Shown: piece by piece, positions 3,901-38,071 of the stretch | How the letters are laid out: every line of letters starts with the position of its first letter | Position numbering within the stretch: the stretch's first letter is position 1 | Position numbers and translations under genes: made by a program | Notes under the pieces: generated by a model | The model's database searches: none | What the model was told of the DNA's origin: nothing | The model's input: only the letters and a program-made list of their open reading frames with translations | Virus record (IMG/VR): IMGVR_UViG_3300046660_000488 | Span: 186,001-250,000 of that record | Strand: one strand, 5' to 3' | Length of the DNA: 64,000 bases

Positions 3901-4661
3901 AGATCATCCTCGACTGCACTGCCAACCTTGGTGATTTCCTGAATGCCATGCCGGTGCTGTCGGGTATCGCCAAGACCTGTGGCCTGATCGACTTCACGAT
4001 CCGCGATGACATGTCGAAGTTCACGGGGATCAAAGAATTCCTGATGTTCCAAGGCATCTTCTCGGACGTGCGGTTCATCAGCGAGCGAGCCGCAGTCGGG
4101 GACCTGACCTTCCACGCCAACATCAGCAGTTGGACCCGCGAGGACAAGGCCAACGACGACCGGCCGACCGAAACCTGCCGCTACGAAAACTGGATGCGGG
4201 ACCACTTCCCGCATATCCCGTTCGAGGTGGACGACAAGTTCGAGATCAAGGCGCCGGTCTATGTCGATGTGCCGATCATGGACGGATTCTACGCGGGCGA
4301 CCGCTGGCATCACAAGACCGATCCGCGCCGCCGCGAGAACATCATTTCGCACCTCGACGGATGTCACTTCCTCGATTTCACCCAGCCTCTGCTGGTGAAC
4401 GCCTACATCATCAAGAACAGCACCAAGCCGTTCGTGTCCTGCTTCACTGGCGTCGGCATCCTGTCCGACCTCATGAACAAAGAGACCTACATCGTCTGGA
4501 AGCCCGAAGACTTCAACGAAGAATTCAGGCGAGGTGACGACAACATATGGTGGGACAACAAAGATATTCACCAAGTTTTCCGAAAACACTATTATGGGGA
4601 TCGGAAATCTACTCTCGTGCTCGCGCGGGACGCCAACAAAGTCATCTGGGGCCGCGAATGA
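3897..4661 (+). CDS. Putative GT9 (ADP-heptose:LPS heptosyltransferase)-like glycosyltransferase
   Basis: ATGA overlap with the previous stop; N-terminal 'NLGDFLNAMPVLSGI' resembles the GT9 '(I/L)GD....P' motif; 'FVSCFTGVGILSDL' resembles the GT9 'D(S/T)G..HLA' region. Confidence 0.5.
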   Translation: MKIILDCTANLGDFLNAMPVLSGIAKTCGLIDFTIRDDMSKFTGIKEFLMFQGIFSDVRFISERAAVGDLTFHANISSWTREDKANDDRPTETCRYENWMRDHFPHIPFEVDDKFEIKAPVYVDVPIMDGFYAGDRWHHKTDPRRRENIISHLDGCHFLDFTQPLLVNAYIIKNSTKPFVSCFTGVGILSDLMNKETYIVWKPEDFNEEFRRGDDNIWWDNKDIHQVFRKHYYGDRKSTLVLARDANKVIWGRE

Positions 4662-5188
4662 GCTATCTACCGAGTCTGATCCACGACAAGCGAGTGATCC
4701 ACGAAATGGTGCAGATCGCGGGCGCGACGCCCGAAGGCTGCATCGTCGAGGTCGGCGTCTACCAAGGCGGTAGCGCCTCGTACCTGACAGAACTGGCCGA
4801 GAAACAAGGTCGGCAGATTTTCCTCTACGACACCTTCGAAGGCATGCCGGTGTCCGGTGAGCACGACATGCACCCGGTGGGCGATTTCGCCGACACCAGC
4901 TTCGAGAAGGTGCGCGACGCACTGCCCTACGCCACGGTGACCAAGGGGTTCTTCCCCGACAGCGCCATCGACATGCCCGACGTGGCCTTCGTCCATATCG
5001 ATGTGGACCAGTACCAGTGCTACGTGGACTGCATCAACTATTTCAGCCCTCGGATGGTCAAGGGCGGCGTGATGTGGTTCGACGATTACGAGTTGAAGGG
5101 TGCACAGATGGCCGTTGACGAACTCATCGGCAAGGAAAACACCATCGCGGCTGCTTGCGGCCACCACAAACGCTACAAGATTTTCTAA
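4658..5188 (+). CDS. TylF/MycF-family (macrocin-type) SAM-dependent O-methyltransferase
   Basis: ATGA coupling at 4658; 'GCIVEVGVYQGGS', 'LYDTFEGMP', 'KGFFPDS', 'AFVHIDVDQY', 'GGVMWFDDY' are TylF-family motifs. Confidence 0.85.
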   Translation: MSYLPSLIHDKRVIHEMVQIAGATPEGCIVEVGVYQGGSASYLTELAEKQGRQIFLYDTFEGMPVSGEHDMHPVGDFADTSFEKVRDALPYATVTKGFFPDSAIDMPDVAFVHIDVDQYQCYVDCINYFSPRMVKGGVMWFDDYELKGAQMAVDELIGKENTIAAACGHHKRYKIF

Positions 5189-5198
5189 GAGATACTTC

Positions 5199-5690
5199 AT
5201 GGACATTGTTGAATACAAGGGAGTGGCCTACCCTGAATTTCAGGCCAAGGGGTTTTCGTCGCAATTTGCGTTCCCGTTCGCCGCACATTTCTGCAAGGGC
5301 GACGGCTTCGACATCGGCTGCAACCGGCTGGAGTGGGCTTTCCCCGGCGCCCAGCCCATCGACCTGAACTTCGACGACGAGTTCGAGGCCTATAATCTGC
5401 CTGACCGTCAGGTGGATTACATCTTTTCGAGCCACTGTCTGGAGCACCTTCCCGACTGGACGAAGGCTCTCGACCACTGGCATGAGCGTCTGAAGGTCGG
5501 CGGGACGATGTTCCTCTACCTGCCGCACTACGATCAGGCCTACTGGCGTCCGTGGAACAACCGCAAGCACCTGCACGTGTTCACGGCCGAGATCATCGCC
5601 GACTGGCTGCGTGACCACGGCTACGTCAACGTCTTCGCCTCCGGGCGCGACCTGAACCACTCGTTCATGGTGGTGGGGGAGAAAGCCTGA
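5199..5690 (+). CDS. Class I SAM-dependent methyltransferase (Methyltransf_11-like)
   Basis: 'GFDIGC', 'DYIFSSHCLEHLPDW', 'LKVGGTMFLYLPH'. Confidence 0.8.
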   Translation: MDIVEYKGVAYPEFQAKGFSSQFAFPFAAHFCKGDGFDIGCNRLEWAFPGAQPIDLNFDDEFEAYNLPDRQVDYIFSSHCLEHLPDWTKALDHWHERLKVGGTMFLYLPHYDQAYWRPWNNRKHLHVFTAEIIADWLRDHGYVNVFASGRDLNHSFMVVGEKA

Positions 5691-5935
5691 TGTGGAAAGA
5701 CGTCAAGCCCAAGCCGGTCGCTGCACCGGCCAAGCCCTACGTGATCCGTTCGATCACGGTGAAATCGAGCTTCAAGCGGTGAAGCGTTTCGCCCCCATCG
5801 TGGCCTCGATTTTCCTGATCGCGGCCAACCCCGTGGCGTGGGTCACCTACCCGCTTTTGATCGCCTGCAAACACCTGTACGTTCGGCCGCGATAGGCTGT
5901 TGCCATATCTGGTAAACCAGATTAAGCATCATCGC

Positions 5936-6478
5936 ATGTACCGTTACGACAGCACCTGTTCATGTCCCCCGCCCCCGGCGCCGAAGATGACCACCACGGT
6001 CACGCGCACCGATCTGTTCATCGCGTTCGACAAGGCCGAAGCCTTCTACACGGCCGCGTTCGAGCAGGACAAGCTCGACCATGAGACCACGGTCAGCAAG
6101 GCCTACAAGGACTATCAGAAGCGATTGAAAGAGCGCAAGGATGCTCTGAAAGCTGAGATCGCTCGGCTTTTGGCCGCGCCCATCGTGATTCGCGACAAAT
6201 TCCTGTGGTTCAAGGCGAAGACCCGGACGCGGACGCAGGAAGAAGCTGAATCGGATGCGAAGGCTGGCCTTCATCGGCTGTTCTATCCGATGGGTCCGTT
6301 CCAGAAACCGAAGCTGTATTCCTCGAACCAGCATCGCCTCACGCGCGTGCAGGAAATGCGCGCGGCGTCGCTCTGCGATGGCTTCGACACCTTCACCCTG
6401 CCGGAGAATGACATGGTTCTGCTCAGCAATGCAGAGGCCATCGCCGAGGCCACGCCTGAGCCCGAGACTGCCGAATGA
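5936..6478 (+). CDS. Hypothetical protein, paralog family A copy 1
   Basis: Start taken at ATG 5936; shares N- and C-terminal motifs with the next two ORFs. Confidence 0.7.
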   Translation: MYRYDSTCSCPPPPAPKMTTTVTRTDLFIAFDKAEAFYTAAFEQDKLDHETTVSKAYKDYQKRLKERKDALKAEIARLLAAPIVIRDKFLWFKAKTRTRTQEEAESDAKAGLHRLFYPMGPFQKPKLYSSNQHRLTRVQEMRAASLCDGFDTFTLPENDMVLLSNAEAIAEATPEPETAE

Positions 6479-7032
6479 GCGGGATCAACCAAACCGGCTT
6501 CACGGCCGAGATCAGCCGTGTGGCGCTCATCGAACGTCTGGAGATCGCCGCCAAGGCGTATCGGACGAAGCACGACGAATTCAAGGCTGCGTGGGTCGCG
6601 AGAAATGAAGAATCGCTCGCCAAGCAAAAAGTCAATGCAGAGCGCACCCGCCCCATCCACGATGCGGCGAAAGCAGCCTTCATCGCCGAGCGTCTGAAAG
6701 ACGACGTGATGATTCCGGGTTGCCATTCGTGGATGAGGCCGACGCCTCGCAAGAAAACGTTGAAGGAAGCCACGGACGGTTGGTATCAGGAATGGCGTCG
6801 TCTCTGCGAAGAAGACAGCACCCTCTGTTACAGCTTCGAACAAATGCCATACTTTCCTGATGGCGAAGCAATGTGGAAGTCGATCTTCGAGGATGGTCGA
6901 GGCCATCGGCATCACAACTTGCAGTGTGCTGATCGCTGTGACGCTCTTCTGAAACTCGCCGTGGACGAAGACTTGATCAACATCCGCCTCGACGAGCACG
7001 ACATCAAATTGATCAACATGGCTTGGGATTGA
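6475..7032 (+). CDS. Hypothetical protein, paralog family A copy 2
   Basis: ATGA overlap with previous gene; C-terminus 'LLKLAVDEDLINIRLDEHDIKLI'. Confidence 0.7.
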   Translation: MSGINQTGFTAEISRVALIERLEIAAKAYRTKHDEFKAAWVARNEESLAKQKVNAERTRPIHDAAKAAFIAERLKDDVMIPGCHSWMRPTPRKKTLKEATDGWYQEWRRLCEEDSTLCYSFEQMPYFPDGEAMWKSIFEDGRGHRHHNLQCADRCDALLKLAVDEDLINIRLDEHDIKLINMAWD

Positions 7033-7038
7033 AGACCA

Positions 7039-7413
7039 ATGGCCCACAATGACAAGCCTCCGGTCACCGCCGAGATCGACCGGTGCACCCTGCTCGACCG
7101 GTCCACGGCCGTCGCCGCGCACTATCAGGCCATCGTCGATGACGAGCAAGCCGCGAGGAAAGAGCGTGAGGCCATCGAGCGGGAAGAGGGCATCCAGCGC
7201 CGGATGACGTTCTGTTTCTTCTTCAAGCGCTCGCGAGAGAAAGCCGAGGCCATTTACCTGCGGGAGGAAGGGCGCTGGTTGGGCCACAATTGGCCGACCT
7301 CAGCGCAGTACCGCCTGAGCCGCGCTGAATCGCTCATTCGGATGGCGAGCGATGAAACGCTGACCTCCATCCGCATCCCCGAAAACGACATCTACCTGTT
7401 GAACGTCGAGTAG
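7039..7413 (+). CDS. Hypothetical protein, paralog family A copy 3
   Basis: C-terminus 'LIRMASDETLTSIRIPENDIYLL'. Confidence 0.7.
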   Translation: MAHNDKPPVTAEIDRCTLLDRSTAVAAHYQAIVDDEQAARKEREAIEREEGIQRRMTFCFFFKRSREKAEAIYLREEGRWLGHNWPTSAQYRLSRAESLIRMASDETLTSIRIPENDIYLLNVE

Positions 7414-7417
7414 CACC

Positions 7418-8725
7418 ATGAGTGACGAAATCCCCGCAGGCGACCACCGCCGCATCGGTCGCGAACTCGACCTGTTCCACCTGCAAGAAGAGGCCTCGGG
7501 GTCGGTCTTCTGGCACGAGCGCGGCCACACGCTGTTCCGCACGGTCGAAAACTACATCCGCACCCGGCTGGCCAATGCGGGCTACGGCGAGGTCAAGACG
7601 CCCCAACTCTACAGCCAGTCGCTGTTCAAGGCGTCGGGTCACATGGACATGTACGGAGACGCGATCTTCCAGACCGGCGGGGCCTTCATTCCGGAAGAGA
7701 TTCGCTACAATCCCATGGGTCCGGATGATCCGGGCATAACCACGGTGAAGGGCGATCCTCTCGTCCATCCGACTCACGCGCTGAAGCCGATGAACTGCCC
7801 CGGCCACGTTCAGATTTTCAAGGCCGATACCGTCAGCTATCGCCAGCTTCCGTGGCGTATGGCCGAGTTTGGCTGCTGTCACCGCAACGAGCCGTCCGGT
7901 TCGATCCACGGCATCATGCGCGTCCGCCAGTTCACGCAGGATGACGCCCACATCTTCTGCACCGAAGAGCAGGTGGCCGAAGAGACGAAGGCGTTCTGCG
8001 AATTGCTGCTGAGCGTCTATCGCGACTTCGGCTTCACCGACATCGAGATCGGTTTCTCGACCCGGCCGGACGTGCGCGCCGGGACGGACGAGGTCTGGGA
8101 CAAGGCTGAAGAAGCGCTGGCAACCGCCGTCAAGGCGGCGGGCCTGATCTACAAGCTCCAGCCCGGTGAGGGCGCGTTCTACGGCCCCAAGCTGGAATTT
8201 GCGCTGCTGGACAACCGTGGCCGTCGCTGGCAGTGCGGGACGATCCAACTGGATTTCGTCCTTCCCAAGCGTCTGGGCGCCGAGTATGTCGGCCCCGACA
8301 ACGTCGAGCGCCAGCCGGTCATGCTGCATCGGGCAATCCTCGGGTCGCTGGAACGCTTCATCGGCATCCTGCTCGAAAACTACGAGGGCAAGCTTCCCGC
8401 GTGGCTGGCCCCGCAGCAGGTCGTCGTCGTCTCCATCAAGCCGGAGACGAACGATTACGCCAAGGAAGTGTTCGAAACGCTTAAGGGCATGTGGGTCCGC
8501 CCGATCCTTGACATCCGCGACGAGAACGTATCGCAGAAGATCAAGGAGCACAGCGAAATGGCGATCCCCTACATCGTGGCGGTCGGCCCGCGTGACGAGG
8601 ACAACCGCACCATCGCGATCCGCAAGCTGGGCGACAAGAAACCCACGGACTACGAGCTTTTCGAAGGCTGCGGCATGATCGAGGAAGATTGCTTCCCGAT
8701 GGAGCTTCGGAAACACAACTGGTAA
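7418..8725 (+). CDS. thrS: Threonyl-tRNA synthetase, catalytic plus anticodon-binding domains only (no TGS/editing domain)
   Basis: 'DHRRIGRELDLF', 'ALKPMNCPGH', 'AEFGCCHRNEPSG..HGIMRVRQFTQDDAHIF', 'GEGAFYGPK', 'WQCGTIQLDF', 'MLHRAILGSLERFIGILLE', 'LPAWLAPQQV'. Confidence 0.95.
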   Translation: MSDEIPAGDHRRIGRELDLFHLQEEASGSVFWHERGHTLFRTVENYIRTRLANAGYGEVKTPQLYSQSLFKASGHMDMYGDAIFQTGGAFIPEEIRYNPMGPDDPGITTVKGDPLVHPTHALKPMNCPGHVQIFKADTVSYRQLPWRMAEFGCCHRNEPSGSIHGIMRVRQFTQDDAHIFCTEEQVAEETKAFCELLLSVYRDFGFTDIEIGFSTRPDVRAGTDEVWDKAEEALATAVKAAGLIYKLQPGEGAFYGPKLEFALLDNRGRRWQCGTIQLDFVLPKRLGAEYVGPDNVERQPVMLHRAILGSLERFIGILLENYEGKLPAWLAPQQVVVVSIKPETNDYAKEVFETLKGMWVRPILDIRDENVSQKIKEHSEMAIPYIVAVGPRDEDNRTIAIRKLGDKKPTDYELFEGCGMIEEDCFPMELRKHNW

Positions 8726-8767: not shown

Positions 8768-9028
8768 GTGCCTAAGATTCAGACTGACGACTGGGATTCG
8801 ATGGATGGCTACTACGACTGGAGCCAAGAACCACCGAAGCCCGTAAAGCCGGTTTTTTGGACCGACGACAAGGTCGAAATTCTGAGAAGGTGGTGGTTGT
8901 GGGGTGTCAGAACCGTCGTGATCGCCAGCGAATTGGGCACGACGAAAAACGCTGTGATCGGTAAGGGCACTCGAATTGGCCTGACCGGTCTCCACGGATC
9001 GGAACCCCGGCCCGCGCAAATCTATTGA
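8768..9028 (+). CDS. gcrA: GcrA-like cell-cycle regulator (HTH domain)
   Basis: 'WTDDKVEILRRWW..G.....IASELGTTKNAVIGKGTRIGL' matches the GcrA N-terminal HTH (WT.E.V..L..LW..G.S...IA..LG.VTRNAVIGK.HRLGL). GTG start with GAGG RBS. Confidence 0.75.
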   Translation: MPKIQTDDWDSMDGYYDWSQEPPKPVKPVFWTDDKVEILRRWWLWGVRTVVIASELGTTKNAVIGKGTRIGLTGLHGSEPRPAQIY

Positions 9029-9040
9029 AGGAAGTGGGCC

Positions 9041-9712
9041 ATGTCCCTATTCGACGACATCAAGGCCGCCCAACTCCGGGCGCGTAAGGACCGCAACACG
9101 GTCAAGGCCACGCTGCTGACCACGCTGATCACCGAAGCCTCGACGGGCCTCGCAGCGACGCTGCGGACGGAAGCCGAGAACGCGATCAACAAGCTCGCCA
9201 ACGGCGACAAGACCAAGCACGAATGGCCGCCCGGCCGTCTGGACGTCGCGCTGGCCGCCCTCAAGCAAGAGGCCAAGGCCGAAGGCTGGGACGAGGACGC
9301 CTACAAGGCCAAGGTCGCCGACCTCAACGCTCTGGCGGAGTCCGAAGGCTGGCCGCTGGGTCGCCGTGACGCCGAGATTGCCAAGGTCAACGCCCAGTTC
9401 AACAAGGACTGGCTCCCGTCCGACGAGCAAGTCGAGAAGGTCATCGGCAAGTTCGTCAAGGCCGGGCGCGACAACCTCGCGGTCTTCGAGCAGCGCGGCA
9501 ACGCCGAGAAGGTGGACGAGGTCAAGCAAGAGCTTGAAATCCTCACGGATTTCCTGCCCAAGCAACTGACCGAGGGCGAGTTGACGGAGGTCATCAACAA
9601 CTTCCGCGCCGAGCATCCGTCCGCCCAGATCGGCCAGATCATGGGCCACCTCAAAGCCAGCTTCCAAGGTCGCTACGACCCGAAGATGGCCAGCCGCCTC
9701 GCGAACGGGTGA
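9041..9712 (+). CDS. GatB/YqeY domain protein with internal insertion
   Basis: 'IKAAQLRARK', 'EQVEKVIGKFVK', 'ELEILTDFLPKQLTEGEL', 'IGQIMGHLK..FQGRYD.KMAS' typical of YqeY; about 80 extra residues in the middle. Confidence 0.85.
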   Translation: MSLFDDIKAAQLRARKDRNTVKATLLTTLITEASTGLAATLRTEAENAINKLANGDKTKHEWPPGRLDVALAALKQEAKAEGWDEDAYKAKVADLNALAESEGWPLGRRDAEIAKVNAQFNKDWLPSDEQVEKVIGKFVKAGRDNLAVFEQRGNAEKVDEVKQELEILTDFLPKQLTEGELTEVINNFRAEHPSAQIGQIMGHLKASFQGRYDPKMASRLANG

Positions 9713-16835: not shown

Positions 16836-19800
16836 TTAGCCCCTCGGGAAGGGCTTATTCGGCGGGGTGAAATTCGCCGTGTAACGAGCGACCCCCTTGG
16901 TGTAGCGGAAATCGTTGATCTGACCGATGTGGCTGTTGCCAGCCGCTTGGGTCTCATAACCACCGACCGTCAGGCGTTTCGTACCGGCCGCCAGCGTTCC
17001 AGTGAAACTGGAGTTCGTGGCGAACTGTGTACCGTTCATGTAGAAACGGCTGACGCCCGAGGCTCGGGTCCAAGCCATGTGAACCCATTGATCCTTCGGG
17101 AAGGTGACACCGCCAAGCGCGACCGAACCACCACCGACGTACAGGGTGATGACACCAGTCGCCGTCGTGTAGAAGATCGTGTCATTGGCCGTGCCAGCGT
17201 TGTAGGCGCCGAAGAAATTGTCGAAGCCGCCCGTGCCGTAGGCCGTCTTATAGAACCATCCTTCCATGGTGAAATCGCCGGATGCCGCCAGAGCGCCGTC
17301 CGTGTTGTCGATGTACATGAACTGGTTGACCAAGGACGTGAGCGACGACGATCCCCACTTTCCGCGAACCGTCGTGATGGTCGAGGCGGTGGTGATCGTG
17401 CGGCCAGACTTCAGTTCGACCGGAGCCGAACCCTGCGCGCCCGTGAGAGGCAACAGGACCATGGTGTTGGCATAGTACGGATCGACCGGGGTCGAGCCCA
17501 CGTATTCGACAGCGAACGTCTGGTCGGCGGTGTAATCACCAACCGAGGCGCGGACGACGATGTTGCTCGTCGCCGAAGCCACGCCCGTGTTCGCGAACGA
17601 ACCGGTGAGCGTGCCATTGCTGTTGAACGTGACGCCGCTCGGGAGCGTGCCCGACACCAGCGAGTAGACCGGCGTTGCCTGCGACGGCGAGGTCGCAACG
17701 ACCGCCGCCGTGTTCAGAACCGTGTTGGCATAACCAGCCGCGACCGTGGCGTTAGCAGCGGTCGTAAACGTCGGCGCGGCCAGACCGCCAATCGCGTCCG
17801 GCGGGGTGAAGGTCGCGGTGTAGCGAGCCTGACCCACCGTCATGCGGAAATCGTCGATGTAGCCGTTGAACTGGTAGCCGTGGGTCGAGTCCGTCGTGTA
17901 CGGGTAGAGGCCCAGCGTGATCGCGTCGGAATTGACGTTGAACGGGATCGCTCCGGCCGCTGTCGTCGATCCAACTTGGACACCGTTCAGCCACAGGGTG
18001 AAGGTCGTGCCACGACGTTGCAGAGCAATGTGATGCCACGTTCCCGTCGTGATCGGCAGGCCGAAGACGCCGTTCAATTGGAACACGTATCCGCTGGCGT
18101 CGGCGTTCTGACCACGGAATTCGACGGCCGTGATCGTGTTCGCATTACCAGCACCGATGGTTCCACCGTAATAGTAGAACTGGATCGCCTTACCGGCATT
18201 GCCGCCGCTGTTCGTGCCAATCGAAATGATCTCGCTCAGCCAACCATCCGCCGTCGCGACCAGAGCCGTGATGTTGGACTTGAACTCGATGGTCCAATCC
18301 TTCGTGCCGAGGTTGAATGCCGCCGGGAGACCGCTCGAACGGATGTAGTTGGTCAGGACGTTCTGGGCGCCGGTGACGCTCAGAGCGCCGGTGTTCAGCG
18401 GCGTGGACTTTGCAGTGCTGTATCCCCCGTTGCCCGAACCCGCCCACGTGATCAGACCCATGGAATCGGTCAGGGTCGGGTTGGCGCGCAGCACCGACAA
18501 CGTGTTGGCGATGAACGGATCGGCTTCGTTGGTGATCGACAGCGTGGCGTCGCGGGTGAAGCCCGTGGCCACGGCCGTGATGGTCGAGTTGGCCGTAGAG
18601 TTGGCAATCGACGTCGCACCAAAGAGCAGACCAGAGTTGCTGATCGACAGACCCGCAGGCAGAGCGCCAGCGGTCACCGTGTAGGTGGTGGCAGGAGGAG
18701 CCGACAGCGGCAGGAGCACCGATGCGTTCGCCGACGTGCGATAGGTCATCGCATTGTTCGTCCACGTCGGAACCGGGTTGCCCATCGACGGGAACGGCGC
18801 GGACGGCGGTGTGAAAGTTGCCGAATAACGGGCTGTTCCAACCGTGATGCGCGGCTCATCCATGTAACCGTACATGTTGTACTGGAAGCCGTTGATCGAC
18901 GTGCCACCAAGGAACAAGGTTGAAGTCGCCTGTGCTTGGAGTGCGGCCGAACCGATAGCCGTGTTGGCAACCGGGGTCAGCTTCACACCGTTGACGAAGA
19001 AATTGATGACCGTTCCTTCGCGCGTGACAGCAACGTGGTTCCACGTGTTCAGCGTGAAATTGGCTCCCATCGCCGCGTAGTAATCGGCGATGACGCCACC
19101 CGACGTGTTGTACGCACGGAACTTGATGTTCGTCGGCGTGGTCGCGTTGGAACCTTGGATGCCAACGTTCCACGAGTGCGTCTGGTTGTTCGTCACATCC
19201 GGCGCCACGTAGGCCATCAGCGTGGACAAGAAAATGTCGTAGGTGCTGACGTTCGACAGGTTCACCCAGCTTTCGATGGTGAAATTGCTGCTTCCGATGA
19301 CCACAGAGTTGGCCTGCGTGCGAGCAAGGTTCCCCGAGTTCCAGTCGTTGGTGTTGAAGAAGAGCGCCGTGTTGCCGAATTTCGACGACGCAGCGCTGAT
19401 TTTCGCGTTGCCAAGATAGATCGTGTTACGACCCGTCGTGTCCGTGGCGTAAGTCACCACGTTGGCTTGAGCATCGGCGTGGTACAGGAACGCGACGTTC
19501 GAGAAATTCTGGTCGAATTCGGCCAGCGTCGTGTAGGTGTAGCTCTTGGTTTTCGACCGACCGGACGTGTCCGTCGCCTTGATGACGAAGGTGTTGTCGG
19601 TGTTGGTCGAGACGTCGGCGAGAACGCCCGAGACTGTACCGGCGTTGGTCAGCACCGTGTTGCCCGGCAGAGTTCCGGACATCAACGTGTAGGTATTTAC
19701 CGCAGCGCCGTTCGCCACGGCGGTGACCGGGATGGCGACGTTGGCGGTCTTGTAGAATGCACCCAGTGATTGGGTCTTGGTCGTGAACGACGGGCCGTTG

Positions 19801-22800
19801 TCTTGGAAATTACCGAAGGCGGCAGTCGGCGGCGTGAAGGGTTCGACGTAACGAGCAACGCCCGGCGTAACGCGCATTTCGTCCATGTAGCCGTTGAACG
19901 CGCCTTGGAAGTTGTTGATGTTGATCGAGCCGTACTGCATGAACGTCTGGCCTGCGATCATCGGCTGCACGAAGCCAGCCGGAAGCTGCAAGGTCGCGAC
20001 CATGTTGCCGTCGATGAATGCGGTCAGGCTGTCACCCTTGCGAACCAAGGCGAAGTGGTGCCATGCGTTCAGCGACACAGCCGGGATCGGAGCACCAAAT
20101 TGCGCGCCGGGGACCAGCGGGCCGGTGTCGGTCGCGTAGCGGGTCTGGATTGTCAGGTAATCCATCGCCGGTGACGTGTTACCGATGAAGATACCCAAGT
20201 GGTTGCCGATGTTGTTCGACGTATTGCCGTTCGTCAGGTTGAGCAAGCAAGAAGCATAGCCCCCGTTGCTATGGGTCGTCAGACCGGACGAATAGAAGAA
20301 CAGTTCGAACGTGTAGTCGTTGGTTCCGAGCGTCGGCATCAAACCCGTACGAACGATGGAGTCCACCGCGCCGTTGAACTTGATCGAAGACGAACCAAAC
20401 TTGGCCTGCTCCGTGCTGATGACCGCTTGCGATCCTAGCGTGTACGTCGGGAAGACGTAGCCGTTATCGGTCAGGTCTTCGGCATGGATGAGCGACGCAA
20501 CATTGGAGTAATAGACGTCACCCGTCGTACCCAGAAGACGATAAGTCCGCGACGGGGTGGTGCGACCATATTGGTCGGTCGCCGAAACCGCGACGTTGGC
20601 GTACACGCCATCCGCCGGACCGGGGCCGGTTACCAGACCATTTGCGGCGGCGGTGTAGCCGTTGGAGACCGTATAGCTGACGGTAGCGTTGCCGAACGTC
20701 GTCGCCGGAGTGGCCAACGCGATAGCAGCATCCGCCTCAACGTTTGCAGTCGTCGCAGCCGTGAAGTACGGTTGGAAGAAGCTCTCCCAAACCGGCGTGA
20801 AGTTTTCGGTGTACTTGGCGATTGACCAGATGTTCAACGAGCGAACATAGGTGTTCATCAGGTTGTTGACCGAACCGGTGTTGCCGTTGTCGTACGCACC
20901 CAGCGTCAGGTTCTGCGAATCAAAATACGTCGAGGCCGGGGTAACCACGGTAACCGTCGCGGTCAGTGTGCCGTTGAGGTACATCCGCATCGTCGTGCCG
21001 ATCTTCACCACAGCAAGGTGGGTCCACACGTTGAGCGTGGTCGCACCGATCTGGCCGGTCGATCCGTTGTACGACCAATTCCACGTGTTCGTTCCCGGTG
21101 CGTAGACGATGTTGAAGCGTTCTTGAGTCGTGCCGACGTTGATCAGGATGCGAACCGTGGTGGTCCCCGGCGTTGCCGTGGCGTAGACCCACGTTTCGGC
21201 CGTGAAATCACCGACCAGTGCGCGAATGCTTGTCGTACCCGAGGTGAATTTAGCGACCGCCGCGTTGAAGTAAGCACAGGTTTCCCCCGGATAACCCGGC
21301 GCCACAGCCATGAGCGGGCCAGCGGCGTAGGTGATCGGAGCGACCGTGCCGACTTCCGGCGTTAGGGTCGTGTAGGCCACGCCGGTGTTGGCGTTGTTCA
21401 GACGCCACGACAGTGACAGCGCGTTGGCGGTGGTCAGGGTCGGGGCGACACTGAAGGTGCGGGCCGGGGTCTTGTTGCCGTTGCCGTCCGTCGCAATAGC
21501 ATCGAACGACACGGCCGTGGCAGTGTAGGTCGGATACGAACCGGTGATCACACCGTTGCTCAGCAGGCTCAGGTCGCCGGGCAGGGTCGAGTAGGACGCC
21601 AGTGCATAGGTGAGGTGACCGGTCGCATACGGATCGGTCGAGACGAGAGCCACGTTGCTGACGGCCGACTTTTCGTTTCCGCTGGAAACGACACCCGAAA
21701 GCGTCGTCCACTTCGGCAGGCTCGGCGACGAGACCGGAACGTCGTAGCTCGCGCCGGAATAACGCGCAGCATTGGTCAGACGGACTTCGTCGATGTAGCC
21801 GTTCAGACCACGGTGGGTCGCCGTGGCGTCACCGTTGATCAGCAGCGGCGTCGTCAGGTTCTGACGGGTGTACTGCGACGTGGCGACGCGAACGCCATCC
21901 ATGTAGAAAGTCAGGTTCGAAGCGCTGTCGCCGACGATGGCGATGTGATGCCATTCATTCAGCGACACGGCGTTGGCCGAAGCCGCCGTGACCGTCGATC
22001 CGCCCGTGCCCGTGTAGTAGACAACACCTTCCATCTTGCGGTCCGATCCGCGAACGCGCATCGCGAAATTGACCGAAGCATCGGCGTTTTTCTTCAGGAG
22101 GACAGTCGAGTTAGCCGTCTGAGAGGACGTCTGGTAGAACCATCCTTCAACCGTGAACGGGGCCGAGGTCGAGATCGAGTTGAAGGCATAGTTGCCCGAG
22201 GTCGAAGGAAGCGACAGGGCGACCGTGTTGGCGACCGCCAGTGCAGCGTTGCCGAACTTCGAGAAAGACGTGCTCGGAACAACCGAACCGCCCAGTTGTT
22301 GGGTCGGAATGGCGTAGTAATCTTGCAGCGGCATCTGCATTGCAGCAGTCGGGACGGTGATCGTCGCACCCGAATAACGAGCTTGCCCGACAGTCACGCG
22401 GAAGTCGTCGAAGTTGCCGACGTAGGCGTTGTTCGCGACACCACCGGCGCCGAACAGGAAGCCCGACGCTTCGGTCAGGTTGTAGCCCGGAACCTGCGTG
22501 GTGAACGAGCGCGTGCCGTCGAGGTAGCCCGTGAAACCGGTCGCATCACCTTGGATGACGACGTGGTGCCAGTTGGTGTCCGCGACGGTGCCCATGGTCA
22601 TCGGGATGCCAACGCCATACTTGATGTTGAAGACATTTCCAGCCGAGAAATCGAACAGCAGCGAGTTGGCGGTCGCGCCGTTGCTGCCCAGCCATGCCAG
22701 TCCTTCGTACAGACCGATGCGCGAACGCTTGAACCAGAATTCAATGGTGAACGCTTGGGTGTTGATCGCGCCGTTCGGGAACGCCAAATTGGTGGTCGAG

Positions 22801-25800
22801 TTGAGGGCGATAGCCATGCTGGCCGTGCCGAACTTGATGTTGGTCGTGTCACGGCTGTGTCCCGAACCGGTCAGTTGGTTCGACGAGCCATAATTCAGCA
22901 AATCAGCGTCGGCGGGGATGAACGAAACGACGTTGGCCCAGTACTGATCAACCGTGTCGTCGTAGTGGCCCAGATAGGCGACGGCGTTGGAGTAATTGTC
23001 GCTGAAAGTCGTATCGCGCAGGACGGTGATGGCGAACGAACGGTCTGCGAAGTTGCCAACCGGGTCAGTGACGCGGACGTCGAACGGCGTTGTGGTATCC
23101 GCACCAACCGTCGTCGGAGCGCCACGGATGACGCCGTTCGAACCGTACAGCGTCATGCCGCTCGGAACGGTGGTCGAGTTGACCAGCGAATAAACCAGCG
23201 CACCATTTTCCGGATCGGTCGCCGACAGCGTGAACGTGCCGTTGACGCCTTCGGTGACGTTGCCCAGCGTTCCGGCCGGGGTGACCCAGACCGGCGGACG
23301 GTTGTCCAGAACGGTCAGCGAGAAGGTGCGAGCCGTGGACAGCGTGCCGTCCGAAGCATCGACCGTGAAGTTGTAGGCCGTGTTGGAGGCGACGTTCGGC
23401 AGAGCGCCGACGACCAGACCGTTAGAGCGCAGCGCCAGTGTGCCCGGCAGGGTCGAAGCGTTGAGGCTGTAGGTGACCGTCTTGCCTTGCGGATCGACGG
23501 CGAGCAGCGTGGTGCTGTAGCCCGTGTTTTCCAGACCGCTCGGCAGAGCGCCAGCGTTCGTGGTCCAGACCGGAGCCGTGTCCTTCTGCGAGGTGATCGT
23601 GAAGGTACGATCCGAGCGGATCGCGCCGTCGAAAGCGCCCAGCGTGAAGGTGTAGACGGTGTCGGTCGAGACAGTCGGCAGGTTGCCGCTCAGAACGCCG
23701 TTGGCGGCGTCGAAGGTAGCGCCGTCAGGAAAAGCGCCGGAGATCAGCGAGAGTGTGACGGGCGTGCCGTTCGGATCGGTGGCGACGAAGGTCTTGGAGA
23801 AAGCCGTGCCAGCCAGATCGGTCAGGACGTTGCCAGCAGCCGTCGTCCAGACCGGAGCCACGTTCAGTTGAACCGAGATCGAGAATGCACGATCCGTGGT
23901 CTTGTTGGTGAGCTTATCCTTGGCCGTGATGTAGAACGGATAGGTCGTGTCGTTGGTGACCGCCGGAAGCGTTCCGCTGATGACGCCGGTGTTGGCGTTC
24001 AGGGTCATGCCGCTCGGCAGGAATTCTCCGGTACGGACCGAGTACTCGATGGGGTGACCGTTGGCGACAGCGTTGACCGTGTAGGACTGCGCGGTTTGCT
24101 CCAGAGCCGAACCCAGCGAACCCGCAGCCGTGGTGAACGACGGCGCGGCCGAGAACATGACCGTGTAGCTGAAGCTACGCGACGAAGTGCGCTTGGAATC
24201 CGAGGCCGTGACCGTGAAATTGTAGTCGGTGTCGGTCGAGACCGTTCCAATCGTGCCCGAGATCAGGCCCGTGAACGGGTCCATGCTGAGGCCGCTCGGG
24301 AGCGAACCCGAGGTGATCGAAAGCGTGACCTGTTGGTTTTCCGGATCGGTGACAACCACCGTGTTAGAGACCACGGTTCCTTCGATGTACGTACCGAACG
24401 AACCGGCCGGGGTCGTGAAGACCGGGTCAAGGTTCTTCAGCACCGTGATGCTGAAGGTGCGCTGAACAACGTTGTTGCCGTCCGTGACTTCGAACGTGAA
24501 GGTATAGGTCGTGTCGGTGTAGGTGAGCGGAAGGAACGCACCGCCCGTGCTGATGTAATTGCCGCTGACGGACATGTTCGGCGGAAGCGTGCCGCTGACC
24601 ATGGTGTAGGTGAGCGGCAGGCCTTCCGGATCGGTCGCCACGACGCTGAAGCCAGCGGTGTAGCCCGAGAGGGCCGTGCCCAGCGAACCAGCAGGCGTGG
24701 TCCAAACCGGCGGAGCGTCGGTGGCCACGGACATGGTGAAGGCGCGGTCGGCATAATGGATGCCGTCCGAAGCACGAACCGTGAAATTGTAGGACGTCGT
24801 GGTCGTCACGTTCGGCGTCGTGCCGGTGATGACGCCAGCCGGGGTCATGCCCATACCAGTCGGCAGAGCGCCGCTGATGATGCTGTAGGTCATGACCTGA
24901 CCTTCGGAGTCAGCCGCCGACAGAGCGACCGAAACCGATTTGTTCTTGATGAAATTGCCCAGCGAACCGGCCGGAGTGATCCACGTCGGGGTGCTGTCGG
25001 CCAGCAGCGTGATGCTGAAAGGACGGTCGGCGCTCAGGACGCCATCGCTGGCGCGAATCGTGAAATTGTAGGACTGGCCTTCCTGAGACAGCGTCGTGAT
25101 CCGGCCGCCGATGCTGCCGTTGATCAGAGACAGACCAGTCGGGAGCGCGCCTGACACGACGCTGTAGGTCAGCGACTGGCCATTGGCATCCGTGGCGCTC
25201 AGATTGATGTTGACGGCTTCGTTGGTGCTGAAGCTACCCAGCGAACCGGAAGCCGTGACCCACACCGGAGCCACGTTCTTCTCGACGCGCATGGTGAAGT
25301 CTTGTGTGGCGTCCTTGATGCCGTTGAACGCCTTGATCGTGAAGGCGTAATCTTCAGCATCCGTGACCGCCGGGAACGAGCCACTGAGCAGGCCGCTCTT
25401 GGACATCGTGATGCCGACTGGCAGGACGCCGCTCTCCAGCGTGTAGATCATCGGACCATTGCCGACGCCGCTGGCTTCGAGTTGACGGCTGTAGGCCAGA
25501 CCTTCGATTTGCGTGCCGAGGCTCGGGTTCGTGATCCAGACCGGCGGCGAGTTGAACTTCGTGGTGATCGTGAAGGTGCGCGCCGTGCGGCTCGACTGGT
25601 TGTTCGAATTGTCGTCCGCGTACAGCATGAAGCTGGTCGTGACGTCGTTGTTCACCTTCGGAAGCGAACCGTTGATCACGCCCGTCGCCTGATTGAGCGA
25701 CAGACCCATCGGCAGGATGTTGCCCGGTGCGTTGTAGAAGGCAATCGGACGGCCTTCCGGATCATTCGCCGCGATGGTGGCGCTGAACGGCATGGTCTCG

Positions 25801-35212: not shown

Positions 35213-38071
35213 ATGAGCCTCTACAAGGACACGGTCTTCCTCCCGACCACGTCTTTCACCATGCAGCGCCCGACCATCGCGGACGAGGCGGCTATGGTGC
35301 GCTCGTGGGGCCACCTCTACCAGAATTATGGGCCGCGCTCCGTCGATCTGACGGATGACGATCCGTTCGTCCTGCACGACGGCCCGCCATACGCCAACGG
35401 CGACATCCACATCGGCCACGCGATGAACAAAGTCCTCAAGGACTTCATCGTCCGGTCGCAGCGTGGCATGAACAAGTCCGTGGACTATCGTCCGGGCTGG
35501 GACTGCCATGGCCTGCCCATCGAGACGCAGGTCGAGAAAATCCTGCTGGAAGAAGGCGTGCAGAAGAAGCGCCTTGGCCCGGTGGCCTTCCGCGACCGCT
35601 GCCGCGAGTACGCGCAAGGCCAGATGGACAAACAGCGCGACCAATTCAAAGCGCTGGGCGTCATGGCCGACTACAAGGCCCGCTATTCCACGATGGACTT
35701 CGCCTCCGAGGCGGCCATCGCCGACCGCTTGCACCTGCTGCTGGTCGCCGGGCTGCTCTATCGCGGCAAGAAGCCGATCCTGTGGAGCACCATCGAGGAA
35801 ACGGCCTTGGCTGAAGCCGAGGTCGAGCACAAGCCGATCAAGGTCACCAGCGCCTATGTCGCTTTCCGCATCTACGCCGAAGGCAAGGACATGCGCGACC
35901 CTTCGGCCGAGTATGTGATCGCGCCGATCTGGACCACCACGCCGTGGACCATCCCGGCCAACCGCGCCATCGCGTTCAACCCCGCCCTCGAATATCGCCT
36001 GTACCGTGTCCTGCATGCGGCTGGAACCGTCCTGAACCACGGCGAACAACTCGTGCTGGCCAAGAGCTTGGCTCCGAAGGTTCTGGCCGAGCTTGGCGTG
36101 ACCGAATGGGAAGAGCTTGAGCGCTACGAGTTGGCGGGCCGCGAGTACTACAGCCCGCTGGCCAATGGTGGCTCCAGCTTCGTCTACAACAACTCCATGC
36201 CGTTCATCGTTGGCAACCACGTCACCGACGCCATGGGCACGGGTCTCGTTCACACGGCTCCGGACCACGGTCCGGATGACTATGCCTGCTGGATGAAGTA
36301 CTGCGAAGACGGCGCCGGTAGCGAATTCTACCCGATCTTGAACGCGGACGGCACGTTCAGCGAGTTGATCCCCGGCATCGGCGGGATGAACGTCCTGAAC
36401 CAGACGCCCAAGGGTGAGTACATCTTCGAGTACACCAATGCGGTGATGATCGAAACGCTTGGGTCCGCCGTTCTCGGCCGGGCCAAGGTCGAGATCAGCT
36501 ATCCGCATTCGTGGCGCTCCAAGGCGCCGCTGGTCTACCGCGTCACGCCGCAGTGGTTCATGTCCGTGGACGACGACCTGCGTGGCATCTGCGACAAGGC
36601 CATCGACGAGGTTCTGTTCCCGCCGGGCCAAGAGCCCAGTAAGGAACGTCTGAAGGCGTCGATGGCGTCGCGCCCGGACTGGCTGATCAGCCGCCAGCGC
36701 TGGTGGGGCACGCCTCTGGCGCTGTTCTTCCACAAGGACACGAACGAACCGCTGCGCGACGAGATCGTCAACGCCCGGATCGTCGAAACCTTCCGCGAGG
36801 AAGGCGGCAATTCGTGGTGGGAGCGGCCCAAGACCTATTGGCTCGAATTGGCTGAGGTCAATCCGGACGATTACGTGCAGTGCATGGACGTGCTGGACGT
36901 GTGGTTCGACTCTGCCTCCAGTCTGGCGCTCATCGAGTTTGGTCAGGCTGACCTCTACCTCGAAGGTACGGACCAGCATCGTGGGTGGTTCGGCTCGTCG
37001 CTGCTCCAGCAGTGCGCGATCCTCGACACCTACGTCGAGAATTACTACGCCCCGTTCGCCCAACTGGTGACGCACGGTTTCGTGCTCGACGCCAAGGGCG
37101 AGAAGATGTCCAAGTCCAAGGGCAACGTCATCCCGCCTGAGAAGGTTGTTGCCGACTATGGGACCGATGTCCTGCGGTTGTGGGTCGCCACCAGCGACTA
37201 CACGCAGGACATCCGCGCCGGGGACAAAATCTTCGACAGCGCGGCCGACATCTACAAGAAACTGCGGTTGACGATTCGCTACCTGCTGGGCGCCCTGCAA
37301 GGGTGGTCCGACGACGAGTGGACGCGGCCATCCAGCCCGCTGGAGAATTTCGTCCTGTCACGGATGAACGATCTGAACGAGGACGTGGCCAAGGCTTACG
37401 CCGAGTACCGGTTCAACGACGTGGTGCGGATGGTGATGAACTATTCGTCCAACACCCTGTCGTCGTTCTTCTTCGACATCCGCAAGGACACGCTCTACTG
37501 CGACCCGTTGATCTCGTCGGTCAAGCGTCGGGAATACCGGACGGCTCTGCTGCAATTGCTGCAAGCGATGACCGCATGGCTTCAACCCATCGTCCCGTTC
37601 ATGATGGATGAGGCGTTCGTGGCGCTCGGCTGGAGCCGGGACCAGCGCATCATCACGCGCGGCTACCCCATCGATTTCGCCGACGACGAGAAGAAGGCGT
37701 TGGAGGACCGTTTCGGCTGCGTGTTCGAGGTGTTGGATTTCGTCAACGACCAGTTGGAAGCCCTTCGCCGCGACAAGACGATCAAGACCGGGCTGGACCT
37801 GTTCATCCAAGTCCACATGCCCGAGCGCCACTTCAAGGCGTTCGAAGGTCTGGACGCGGCCGAAATCCTGCGGGTCAGCCAAGTCGGGCTGTTCGTGAAC
37901 CCGAACCCAAAGGACAACGAGTTCAAATTCGCGCACTACCCCGCCAAGGGTGAGCGGTGCGAGCGCTCGCGCCGGTTCTTCTACGACGTCGGCTCCGACC
38001 CAAACCACCCGACCCTGTCGGCGCGCGATGCGCTGGCGGTCGAGGAATACAAATTCATCAACCAGCCATGA
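35213..38071 (+). CDS. ileS: Isoleucyl-tRNA synthetase
   Basis: 'LHDGPPYANGDIHIGH' (HIGH), 'PGWDCHGLPIE', 'WTTTPWTIPAN' editing domain, 'GTGLVHTAPDHG', 'DWLISRQRWWG', 'YLEGTDQHRGWF', 'KMSKSKGN'. Confidence 0.97.
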   Translation: MSLYKDTVFLPTTSFTMQRPTIADEAAMVRSWGHLYQNYGPRSVDLTDDDPFVLHDGPPYANGDIHIGHAMNKVLKDFIVRSQRGMNKSVDYRPGWDCHGLPIETQVEKILLEEGVQKKRLGPVAFRDRCREYAQGQMDKQRDQFKALGVMADYKARYSTMDFASEAAIADRLHLLLVAGLLYRGKKPILWSTIEETALAEAEVEHKPIKVTSAYVAFRIYAEGKDMRDPSAEYVIAPIWTTTPWTIPANRAIAFNPALEYRLYRVLHAAGTVLNHGEQLVLAKSLAPKVLAELGVTEWEELERYELAGREYYSPLANGGSSFVYNNSMPFIVGNHVTDAMGTGLVHTAPDHGPDDYACWMKYCEDGAGSEFYPILNADGTFSELIPGIGGMNVLNQTPKGEYIFEYTNAVMIETLGSAVLGRAKVEISYPHSWRSKAPLVYRVTPQWFMSVDDDLRGICDKAIDEVLFPPGQEPSKERLKASMASRPDWLISRQRWWGTPLALFFHKDTNEPLRDEIVNARIVETFREEGGNSWWERPKTYWLELAEVNPDDYVQCMDVLDVWFDSASSLALIEFGQADLYLEGTDQHRGWFGSSLLQQCAILDTYVENYYAPFAQLVTHGFVLDAKGEKMSKSKGNVIPPEKVVADYGTDVLRLWVATSDYTQDIRAGDKIFDSAADIYKKLRLTIRYLLGALQGWSDDEWTRPSSPLENFVLSRMNDLNEDVAKAYAEYRFNDVVRMVMNYSSNTLSSFFFDIRKDTLYCDPLISSVKRREYRTALLQLLQAMTAWLQPIVPFMMDEAFVALGWSRDQRIITRGYPIDFADDEKKALEDRFGCVFEVLDFVNDQLEALRRDKTIKTGLDLFIQVHMPERHFKAFEGLDAAEILRVSQVGLFVNPNPKDNEFKFAHYPAKGERCERSRRFFYDVGSDPNHPTLSARDALAVEEYKFINQP

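What the first reader, a model, noticed from the sequence alone, without database searches (positions are those of the whole stretch)
7418..8725. ThrRS that starts at the catalytic core: no editing domain
Seen: the ORF begins 8 residues before 'DHRRIGRELDLF'. The upstream gene ends 4 nt earlier, so the ~240-aa TGS and N2 editing domains cannot be present in cis. There is also an extra ~25-aa loop ('GGAFIPEEIRYNPMGPDDPGITTVKGDPL') before 'ALKPMNCPGH'. Known: bacterial ThrRS uses N2 to hydrolyse Ser-tRNA(Thr); editing-less forms occur in some mitochondria and in archaea with free-standing editors. Inference: the phage enzyme may mistranslate, rely on a trans editor, escape host thrS autoregulation, or evade a defence that targets the host enzyme.
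Basis: partly seen in the sequence, partly recalled or inferred. Interest (0 to 1): 0.6.

Follow-up and report, generated by a model that had tools for sequence, protein, structure and literature searches.

The report
Editing-free threonyl-tRNA synthetase of huge phages
A 578-kb phage carries an intact-looking threonyl-tRNA synthetase that has only the charging core and anticodon-binding domain and no proofreading domain, a form shared by dozens of related huge phages and matched in the same genome by a valyl-tRNA synthetase that has also lost its proofreading domain.

Summary
ORF 7418..8725 (+, 435 aa) is a ThrRS that starts 8 residues before DHRRIGR, which is the boundary of the E. coli ΔN (242-642) crystallisation construct. 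The upstream ORF ends 4 nt earlier.

It is not an artefact. About 50 homologues at 57-69% identity share the start MS[DE]EL..DHRR. Many lie on 0.4-0.6 Mb phage contigs, and they form one clade (support 100). An independent soil metagenome shows the same junction without indels.

All 18 checked active-site positions, including the zinc triad, are invariant. The complete genome has no TGS, N2/SAD, AlaX, YbaK/ProXp, archaeal ThrRS-ed or DTD homologue. The nearest cellular relatives are full-length alphaproteobacterial enzymes.

The "extra loop" is real. However, many full-length alphaproteobacterial ThrRS carry a conserved 25-residue segment at the same site, against 12 in the others. In the phage clade this segment is hypervariable, 5-80 residues long.

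Three near-invariant anticodon-loop positions (E. coli N575, K577, R583) are switched throughout the clade. The same genome also encodes a ValRS without its CP1 editing domain, while its IleRS is full length.

Most likely this is an active minimal ThrRS that charges the phage's four tRNA-Thr, with errors tolerated or corrected by the host enzyme. I rate it a new variant of a known kind, of moderate interest.

The parts
7418..8725 (+). thrS, a minimal ThrRS of 435 aa: catalytic core plus anticodon-binding domain, with no TGS or N2 editing domain
   Evidence: The AF2 model has pLDDT 87.6 and matches E. coli/Salmonella ThrRS(242-642) structures at TM 0.91-0.93.
7418..7441 (+). Conserved short N-terminus (MSDEIPAG; clade consensus MS[DE]EL...) that replaces the end of the linker helix
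   Evidence: 39 non-redundant clade members start 7-10 residues before DHR (P0041: 3). Positions that are A, K and R in 95 full-length enzymes are changed here.
7442..8392 (+). Class II catalytic domain (residues 9-325) with the zinc triad C127/H178/H304 (E. coli C334/H385/H511) and motif 2/3 arginines R156 and R313
   Evidence: All 18 checked active-site positions are invariant in 50 short and 67 full-length sequences.
7676..7774 (+). Expanded beta-hairpin loop (residues 87-119) just before the zinc-binding Cys. It corresponds to the beta4-beta5 loop of yeast MST1.
   Evidence: It sits in place of the E. coli turn around residues 321-326. pLDDT is about 50. Length is 5-80 residues and the sequence is hypervariable within the clade. 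A conserved 25-residue counterpart occurs in many full-length alphaproteobacterial ThrRS. MST1 Lys123 in this loop contacts the tRNA bound to the other subunit (PMC4756836).
8417..8638 (+). HGTP anticodon-binding domain (residues 334-407) with clade-specific D368, N370 and K376 in place of E. coli N575, K577 and R583
   Evidence: The roles of N575 (C34/U32) and R583 (A37/A38) come from PMC4756836.
7039..7413 (+). Upstream small ORF of 124 aa, the last of three weakly similar tandem paralogues. It is not a TGS or N2 domain.
   Evidence: No Pfam or PHROG hit. A custom N-terminal HMM gives no hit. Paralogy and homologues upstream of thrS in L018 and L010 are shown. The Atlas gives only helical hypothetical proteins.
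8768..9028 (+). GcrA-like small regulator gene, also found next to thrS in L010 and L018
   Evidence: PF07750, E 8e-10.
9041..9712 (+). YqeY/GatB-like protein of 223 aa. It lies 0-3 genes downstream of the short thrS in six genomes and is single-copy in four complete genomes.
   Evidence: PF09424, E 8e-18. It is not linked to thrS in L014, L015, L016 or L019.
35213..38071 (+). Context: full-length IleRS (952 aa) that keeps its CP1 domain. Editing-domain loss is therefore selective, not general, in this genome.
   Evidence: TIGR00392 scores 657 bits over model positions 32-853 of 861 in one stretch.

Best explanation
The gene encodes a catalytically competent, dimeric, bacterial-type ThrRS reduced to its aminoacylation core and anticodon-binding domain. 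It descends from an alphaproteobacterial-type full-length thrS. The first ~240 codons (TGS, N2 editing domain and linker) were lost once in the ancestor of a large clade of 0.4-0.6 Mb phages, and the short form has been kept under purifying selection since.

During infection it activates threonine through the usual zinc-dependent site. It charges tRNA-Thr, most plausibly the phage's own four isoacceptors (CGU x2, UGU, GGU), which carry the bacterial identity pairs G1-C72 and C2-G71. Its reading of the anticodon loop is modified (N575D, K577N, R583K).

Without the N2 domain it cannot carry out post-transfer hydrolysis of Ser-tRNA-Thr, and the phage encodes no recognisable substitute. Any Ser-tRNA-Thr would therefore be limited by active-site selectivity or pre-transfer hydrolysis (as in yeast MST1), removed by the host's own full-length ThrRS, or simply tolerated during a short infection.

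Shown here: the architecture, its conservation, the intact active site, the absence of known editors, and a second editing-less synthetase in the same genome. Inferred: enzymatic activity, the substrate tRNAs, and how errors are handled.
For: - Family membership above the curated cut-off, with only the two C-terminal domains present.
- The start coincides with the active E. coli 242-642 construct, and the model superposes on it at TM 0.91-0.93.
- All 18 active-site positions are invariant, and 114 of 124 columns that are invariant in full-length enzymes are kept.
- 39 non-redundant short sequences form one clade (SH-aLRT 100) with substantial internal divergence (members are 57-70% identical to the window protein) and a common N-terminus.
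- The members lie on contigs of 242-608 kb.
- PF07973, PF04073, PF08915, PF02824 and PF02580 give no match in the complete 578-kb genome, while control genomes do match.
- A custom 245-residue N-terminal HMM finds nothing in 7,995 six-frame ORFs (best E 0.33), while controls score 303-319 bits. It also finds nothing in ten loci that hold a short thrS.
- Three further near-complete genomes of 516-608 kb also lack the SAD domain.
- The genome has four tRNA-Thr with G1-C72/C2-G71 among 69 tRNAs.
- The same genome encodes a ValRS lacking CP1 that belongs to more than 100 similar clusters.
- Precedent: the minimal ThrRS MST1 is active, has pre-transfer editing and still forms some Ser-tRNA-Thr (PMC4267643).
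Against: - There is no biochemical or expression evidence. No RNA run holds the locus.
- The three switched anticodon-loop residues could mean an altered or additional RNA substrate rather than ordinary tRNA-Thr.
- Absence of known editor families does not exclude a novel one among the many unannotated phage genes.
- IleRS in the same genome keeps its editing domain, so editing is not generally dispensable for this phage.
- The host is unknown, so rescue by the host enzyme is conjecture.
Confidence: 0.7

Rival explanations
1. The short ThrRS works with an unrecognised phage-encoded trans factor. This could be a novel editor, or a tRNA-binding helper such as the neighbouring YqeY/GatB-like protein or the small upstream proteins. 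Such a factor would replace the acceptor-stem contacts or the proofreading that the N-terminal domains provide.
For: YqeY lies 0-3 genes downstream of the short thrS in six genomes whose GC content ranges from 36 to 59%, and it is single-copy in four complete genomes. Homologues of the small upstream ORF family also precede thrS in L018 and L010. From my own knowledge, YqeY-type domains act as tRNA-binding appendages in GatB and in Deinococcus GlnRS.
Against: YqeY is hundreds of kb from thrS in G002 and G003 and is not near it in L016 or L019. The upstream proteins resemble only helical hypothetical proteins. No known editor fold family is present.
Confidence: 0.12
2. The protein has a role other than bulk translation. 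It might bind a tRNA-like RNA, act as a decoy or resistant copy against a host or competitor factor that targets ThrRS, or form heterodimers with host ThrRS.
For: Three anticodon-loop contact positions that are at least 95% conserved in 95 full-length enzymes are switched throughout the clade. The beta4-beta5 loop is hypervariable in length and sequence, as expected of a surface under conflict or under no constraint. The protein is 52-60% identical to alphaproteobacterial ThrRS, so the dimer interface could be compatible.
Against: Every catalytic and zinc-binding residue is invariant across a deep clade, which argues for retained aminoacylation chemistry. The gene co-occurs with phage tRNA-Thr genes and with several other ordinary-looking synthetases.
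Confidence: 0.12
3. The gene is a decaying fragment or an annotation or assembly artefact of a full-length thrS.
For: None beyond the unusual length.
Against: The same start occurs in about 50 homologues. The clade is monophyletic with conserved active sites. The junction appears in an independent sample without indels. No N-terminal remnant exists in any frame.
Confidence: 0.01

Closest known systems
E. coli ThrRS ΔN (residues 242-642), the laboratory truncation used for PDB 1EVK, 1EVL and many inhibitor complexes
   Same: Same domain content and the same N-terminal boundary (query residue 7 = E. coli 242). Identity is 45-46% and TM 0.91-0.93.
   Different: The phage protein is a natural gene. 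It carries a ~26-residue longer beta-hairpin loop, three changed anticodon-loop contacts and a 28-residue C-terminal tail. From my own knowledge of Dock-Bregeon et al. 2000, the E. coli truncation charges tRNA-Thr but also mischarges it with serine.
Yeast mitochondrial ThrRS MST1 (minimalist ThrRS; PDB 3UGQ, 4YYE)
   Same: [quoted passage not shown] It carries Lys at the position equivalent to E. coli R583, as the phage clade does. Its beta4-beta5 loop is the site of the phage insert (PMC4267643, PMC4756836).
   Different: Identity is only 31-32% and TM 0.84. The loss was independent, in a eukaryotic organelle lineage. MST1 is tied to an unusual tRNA-Thr1 and to CUN reassignment, and nothing comparable is seen here.
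Crenarchaeal split system ThrRS-cat plus free-standing ThrRS-ed (e.g. Aeropyrum pernix ThrRS-1, PDB 3A31)
   Same: The thrS gene is shortened at the 5' end so that the synthetase lacks the editing domain (PMC7373986).
   Different: Those genomes supply a DTD-like ThrRS-ed in trans. PF08915 and PF02580 are absent from this complete genome. The archaeal catalytic core is distant (28% identity, TM 0.71-0.75).
Full-length alphaproteobacterial ThrRS (Sphingomonadales, Hyphomonadaceae, Devosia, Micavibrio and others)
   Same: These are the closest cellular sequences in the first search (56-60% identity). Many carry an expanded loop at the same hairpin.
   Different: They have TGS and N2 domains. Their loop is fixed at 25 residues with a conserved acidic motif. 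They have N, K and R at E. coli positions 575, 577 and 583.
ThrRS genes of other huge phages (Sinorhizobium phage Phosso, 469 kb; uncultured phage LR756504, 636 kb)
   Same: All are phage-borne thrS genes. The LR756504 gene (386 aa) and that of G003 (410 aa) are also truncated at DHR.
   Different: The Phosso gene is full length at 640 aa. The LR756504 and G003 genes lie outside the core clade in the trees, but a single origin is not rejected (AU p 0.44 and 0.47).

Membership tests
Threonine--tRNA ligase (TIGR00418 thrS; class IIa) | Whole-protein score above the curated equivalog cut-off | tested here: met
   447.7 bits against a cut-off of 383.65
Threonine--tRNA ligase (TIGR00418 thrS; class IIa) | Class II core (motifs 2 and 3) plus the HGTP anticodon-binding domain | tested here: met
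   PF00587 E 1.2e-47 and PF03129 E 2.5e-12. R156 and R313 are invariant.
Threonine--tRNA ligase (TIGR00418 thrS; class IIa) | Zinc triad Cys334/His385/His511 and the Thr-binding residues (E. coli numbering) | tested here: met
   C127, H178, H304, D176, Y255, K258 and Q277 are present and invariant in 50 short sequences.
Threonine--tRNA ligase (TIGR00418 thrS; class IIa) | N-terminal TGS and N2 (tRNA_SAD) editing domains of the bacterial enzyme | tested here: not met
   Absent from the protein. Absent from the genome by PF02824, PF07973 and a custom HMM.
Threonine--tRNA ligase (TIGR00418 thrS; class IIa) | Thr-tRNA-Thr synthesis | not testable with these tools
   Requires an enzyme assay.
Split ThrRS-cat / ThrRS-ed system (Crenarchaeota) | A free-standing DTD-like ThrRS-ed gene in the same genome | tested here: not met
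   PF08915 and PF02580 give no match in the complete genome, while control genomes match.
Synthetase with a trans-editing partner (AlaX, YbaK/ProXp-ST) | An AlaX (SAD) or INS/YbaK-family gene in the genome | tested here: not met
   PF07973 and PF04073 give no match. SAD is also absent from G001-G003.
MST1-type minimalist mitochondrial ThrRS | Architecture limited to catalytic and anticodon-binding domains | tested here: met
MST1-type minimalist mitochondrial ThrRS | Common descent with the fungal mitochondrial enzymes | tested here: not met
   31-32% identity to MST1 against 56-60% to alphaproteobacterial ThrRS. The protein sits inside a phage clade placed next to Alphaproteobacteria.
MST1-type minimalist mitochondrial ThrRS | tRNA-dependent pre-transfer editing in the synthetic site | not testable with these tools
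   Requires AMP-formation assays as in PMC4267643.

The most novel reading that the evidence does not exclude
Huge phages of this group run a deliberately proofreading-poor branch of translation. They carry a minimal ThrRS (no N2) and a minimal ValRS (no CP1), each conserved over a deep clade. The ThrRS has a retuned anticodon-loop interface for phage tRNAs. The removal is adaptive rather than neutral: it could give faster charging, freedom from host factors that act through the N-terminal/TGS or CP1 modules, or tolerated Ser/Thr and Thr/Val ambiguity. It may also have happened more than once, in the core clade, in G003 and in LR756504.
Probability: 0.2. Interest if true: 0.75.

Novelty: new variant of a known kind. 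Interest (0 to 1): 0.55.

Why it matters
[quoted passage not shown] The natural exceptions described so far are fungal mitochondria, crenarchaea that keep a separate editor, and mycoplasmas with degenerate editing sites.

Here a bacterial-type ThrRS with no editing domain and no detectable editor has been maintained across a diverse clade of the largest known phages. It sits beside a ValRS that has also lost its editing domain. This gives a natural test of how much proofreading a viral translation supplement needs.

It also offers a compact, apparently self-sufficient ThrRS scaffold for biochemistry. In addition, it points to specific residues (E. coli 575, 577, 583 and 473-474) and one loop that appear to change when the N-terminal module is removed.

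In the paper library searched, nothing describes this form.

Tried and rejected
- **Upstream rescue of the N-terminus.** The three upstream frames show no TGS or N2 sequence. The nearest in-frame stop is 18 nt before the ATG, and the upstream ORF is in another frame, so TAG read-through would not fuse the two.
- **Recoding.** The genome has two tRNA(CUA) genes, but TAG ends 170 of 727 long open frames. I named no alternative genetic code.
- **ThrRS-YqeY complex prediction.** The job returned no verdict (score 0.00). It counts neither for nor against binding.
- **Truncation to admit long-variable-arm tRNA-Thr.** The phage's tRNA-Thr(UGU) is 86 nt with an extra arm. In G003 the tRNA-Thr genes are of ordinary length, 73-74 nt, so I dropped this idea.
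- **Upstream small ORFs as stand-ins for the N-terminal domains.** They have no family hit and resemble only helical hypothetical proteins.
- **Number of truncation events.** The maximum-likelihood trees place the G003 and LR756504 genes outside the core clade. AU tests do not reject a single clade (p 0.44 and 0.47), so this is unresolved.
- **Leader RNA, T-box or operator.** None reaches the Rfam gathering thresholds, and promoter and terminator scans are at chance level.
- **Host through the ValRS lead.** The short ValRS was not found in 401 sampled Sphingomonadaceae genomes. The exact-sequence look-up of P0187 found no record.
- **Literature.** Five searches for phage ThrRS or phage synthetases without editing domains found nothing on point.
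- **Large exhaustive protein search.** I did not run it, because no claim here rests on an absence of relatives.

Full report
**1. The observation**

The window is part of a complete 578,292-bp virus record with direct terminal repeats, 59% G+C and 69 tRNA genes. ORF 7418..8725 on the + strand encodes 435 residues beginning MSDEIPAGDHRRIGRELDLF. The preceding ORF, 7039..7413, ends in TAG, and four bases separate it from the ATG. It lies in a different frame. The nearest in-frame stop upstream of the ATG is TGA at 7400, and none of the three upstream frames resembles ThrRS.

Pfam finds only tRNA-synt_2b and HGTP_anticodon. The NCBIfam thrS equivalog scores 447.7 bits, above its cut-off of 383.65, but the match covers only model positions 169-554 of 565. 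Against E. coli ThrRS, query 7-87 aligns to residues 242-322 and query 120-407 to 327-614. The protein therefore starts at the boundary of the E. coli 242-642 construct that was crystallised as 1EVK and 1EVL. It has about 26 extra residues between the two aligned blocks.

An AlphaFold2 model has mean pLDDT 87.6. It superposes on those truncated E. coli and Salmonella structures at TM 0.91-0.93, on yeast MST1 at 0.84 and on Aeropyrum ThrRS-1 at about 0.71-0.75.

**2. It is not an artefact**

The word search returned about 50 clusters at 57-69% identity, 388-488 residues long and without TGS or SAD domains. Several lie on contigs of 484-608 kb and others on contigs of 242-295 kb. All start 7-10 residues before DHR, apart from one at 3, and the consensus is MS[DE]EL.

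A Logan contig of the probable source run (a rhizosphere metagenome) crosses the junction without any difference. A soil metagenome from another study holds a variant with 27 substitutions and no indel across 7383-7805.

**3. Evolution**

On the catalytic and anticodon-binding columns, with the loop excluded, the 39 non-redundant short sequences form one clade. Support is SH-aLRT 100, the stem is long, and internal divergence is substantial. The closest cellular sequences are full-length alphaproteobacterial enzymes of 641-659 aa.

Two further huge phages carry ThrRS truncated at the same motif: G003 (516 kb, 410 aa) and LR756504 (636 kb, 386 aa). Both fall outside the core clade, but AU tests do not reject a single origin (p 0.44 and 0.47). 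Sinorhizobium phage Phosso carries a full-length thrS, so capture by a phage does not by itself produce truncation.

**4. Is the enzyme intact?**

All 18 inspected active-site positions are invariant in 50 short and 67 full-length sequences. These include the zinc ligands C334, H385 and H511, the motif 2 and 3 arginines, and D383, Y462, K465 and Q484 (E. coli numbering). The window protein keeps 114 of the 124 columns that are invariant among full-length enzymes.

Positions that are at least 95% conserved in 95 full-length enzymes but switched in the clade are few:
- The last residues of the former linker.
- E. coli 473-474, where A-I becomes N-K or N-R. G003 has S-Q and LR756504 has S-L at these positions.
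- I526, which becomes L.
- Three positions in the anticodon-binding domain: N575D, K577N and R583K.

In the E. coli complex, Asn575 contacts C34 and U32, and Arg583 stacks on A38 and contacts nucleotide 37. MST1 has Lys at the position equivalent to R583 (PMC4756836). The clade therefore reads the anticodon loop somewhat differently. What this means for function is an inference.

**5. The loop**

The insert (residues 87-119, pLDDT about 50) lies in the beta-hairpin immediately before the zinc-binding cysteine.

It is not specific to phages. In 50 of 80 full-length alphaproteobacterial ThrRS this segment is 25 residues long and follows a conserved acidic pattern (VVPDE[IV]P..EDEGP..SG.A.LMAL). 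Most of the rest have 12 residues.

In the short clade the segment ranges from 5 to 80 residues, has no conserved sequence and is acidic (190 D/E against 46 K/R among 820 residues). The window's "FIPEEI" still resembles the cellular "VPDEIP".

The MST1 paper equates MST1 Arg174 with E. coli Arg375. On that numbering, MST1 Lys123 in the flexible beta4-beta5 loop falls at about E. coli 324, which is in this same turn. There it contacts the 5' phosphate and the A66-U67 backbone of the tRNA bound to the other subunit.

My reading is that the loop was inherited from the alphaproteobacterial-type ancestor and lost its constraint after the N-terminal module was removed. This is an inference. A direct RNA-binding role is unlikely given the loop's charge.

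**6. Editing**

The complete genome has no match to:
- tRNA_SAD (the N2 and AlaX family)
- YbaK/ProXp
- archaeal ThrRS-ed
- TGS
- D-Tyr deacylase

Each search matched control genomes where expected.

A purpose-built HMM of the 245 N-terminal residues of 93 full-length ThrRS found nothing in 7,995 six-frame ORFs (best E 0.33). The controls scored 303-319 bits. It also found nothing within 3-6 kb of the short thrS in ten other loci. Three more near-complete genomes of 516-608 kb also lack SAD.

By established knowledge, the N2 domain carries out post-transfer hydrolysis of Ser-tRNA-Thr. Archaea with a shortened thrS keep a separate editor. Minimal MST1 retains only pre-transfer editing and still forms Ser-tRNA-Thr in vitro (PMC7373986; PMC4267643).

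**7. Context**

The phage encodes four tRNA-Thr, all with G1-C72 and C2-G71. It also encodes full-length SerRS, AspRS, CysRS and IleRS, and a 171-residue HisRS-like fragment.

Most notably, it encodes a ValRS-like protein with an open frame of 517 aa (469 aa from the first ATG). HIGH and KMSKS motifs are present. The protein aligns to T. thermophilus ValRS residues 3-187 and about 350-695, so it lacks the CP1 editing domain and the C-terminal coiled coil. More than 100 clusters of such 411-579-residue ValRS exist, many on contigs of 415-646 kb. G003 has a copy at 63% identity. The nearest full-length ValRS are only 40-43% identical.

Three synthetases in this genome have cellular counterparts that carry editing domains: ThrRS, ValRS and IleRS. 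Two of the three have lost them.

A YqeY/GatB-like gene lies 0-3 genes downstream of the short thrS in six genomes. Elsewhere it is unlinked.

**8. Interpretation**

The best-supported reading is an active minimal ThrRS that supplements charging of tRNA-Thr during infection. Serine errors would be limited by the synthetic site, cleared by the host's own ThrRS, or tolerated.

Rivals are an unrecognised trans partner, a role other than bulk translation or a role in conflict with the host, and an artefact. I rate these at 0.12, 0.12 and 0.01.

**9. Novelty**

Synthetases in huge phages are known (PMC7162821). Editing-less ThrRS is known from fungal mitochondria and crenarchaea. I found no description of a conserved bacterial-type editing-less ThrRS clade in phages, nor of the accompanying ValRS without CP1. 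I class it as a new variant of a known kind.

Noticed in passing
G000:C1 about 174872-176426 (+), outside the window; locus L113 1073..2623: A ValRS-like gene (open frame 517 aa, 469 aa from the first ATG) with HIGH and KMSKS motifs but without the CP1 editing domain or the C-terminal coiled coil. More than 100 similar clusters exist, many on 415-646 kb contigs, and G003 has a copy at 63% identity.
   Followed up: partly
NCBI protein WP_422513522.1 / P0187 (not in the window): One short ValRS of this type is annotated in an isolate assembly named Sphingomonas sp. 3-13AW, on a 581,572-bp contig. This is a possible cultured host or system for this phage group. The gene was not found in 401 sampled Sphingomonadaceae genomes.
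   Followed up: partly
G000:C1:105645-106160 (+); locus L006 1423..1938: A 171-residue HisRS-like fragment lies between two tRNA-His genes. It has part of the catalytic core and no anticodon-binding domain (hisS 122.9 bits, far below the cut-off).
   Followed up: partly
G000:C1:109999-110155 (-), outside the window: Two adjacent tRNA genes with anticodon CUA (amber-suppressor type, called tRNA-Pyl by ARAGORN). TAG still ends 170 of 727 long open frames.
   Followed up: no
G000:C1:42360-42445 (L021 261..343) and other tRNA genes of the genome: tRNA-Thr(UGU) is 86 nt long. Its enlarged variable region can form a 3-bp stem capped by GCAA. Several other tRNAs that normally have short variable arms are also long (Cys 86-87 nt, Lys 85 nt, Gln 86 nt, Asn 88 nt), and similar long Cys and Lys tRNAs occur in G001 and G003.
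   Followed up: partly
window 5900..6478, 6475..7032, 7039..7413 (+): Three tandem, weakly similar small ORFs (E 5e-7 and 3e-4) end in a shared ...P/DE(N/H)D..LLN motif. Homologues lie directly upstream of the short thrS in L018 and L010. No family or function could be assigned.
   Followed up: partly
window 9041..9712 (+), around 9194-9374: The YqeY-like protein carries a ~90-residue insertion between its N-terminal helices and the Pfam-matched part. In the soil-metagenome variant, 179 nt of this region are replaced by 41 other nt.
   Followed up: no
window 16836..27611 (-): A single open reading frame of 3,591 codons. It was not examined.
   Followed up: no
window 4547..5690 (+): Two ORFs (213 and 196 aa) are 77-86% identical to their counterparts in L010. 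This is much more conserved than thrS itself (69%) between the same two phages.
   Followed up: no
L015 7918..8676 (+) (G002, 607 kb phage): A 252-residue class II synthetase-core-like ORF (PF00587, E 5.8e-9) lies two genes downstream of that phage's short thrS. It has no anticodon-binding domain.
   Followed up: no
L019/L020 1965..2366 (-): A PTH2-type peptidyl-tRNA hydrolase gene lies about 1.6 kb upstream of the short thrS (P0037 lineage).
   Followed up: no
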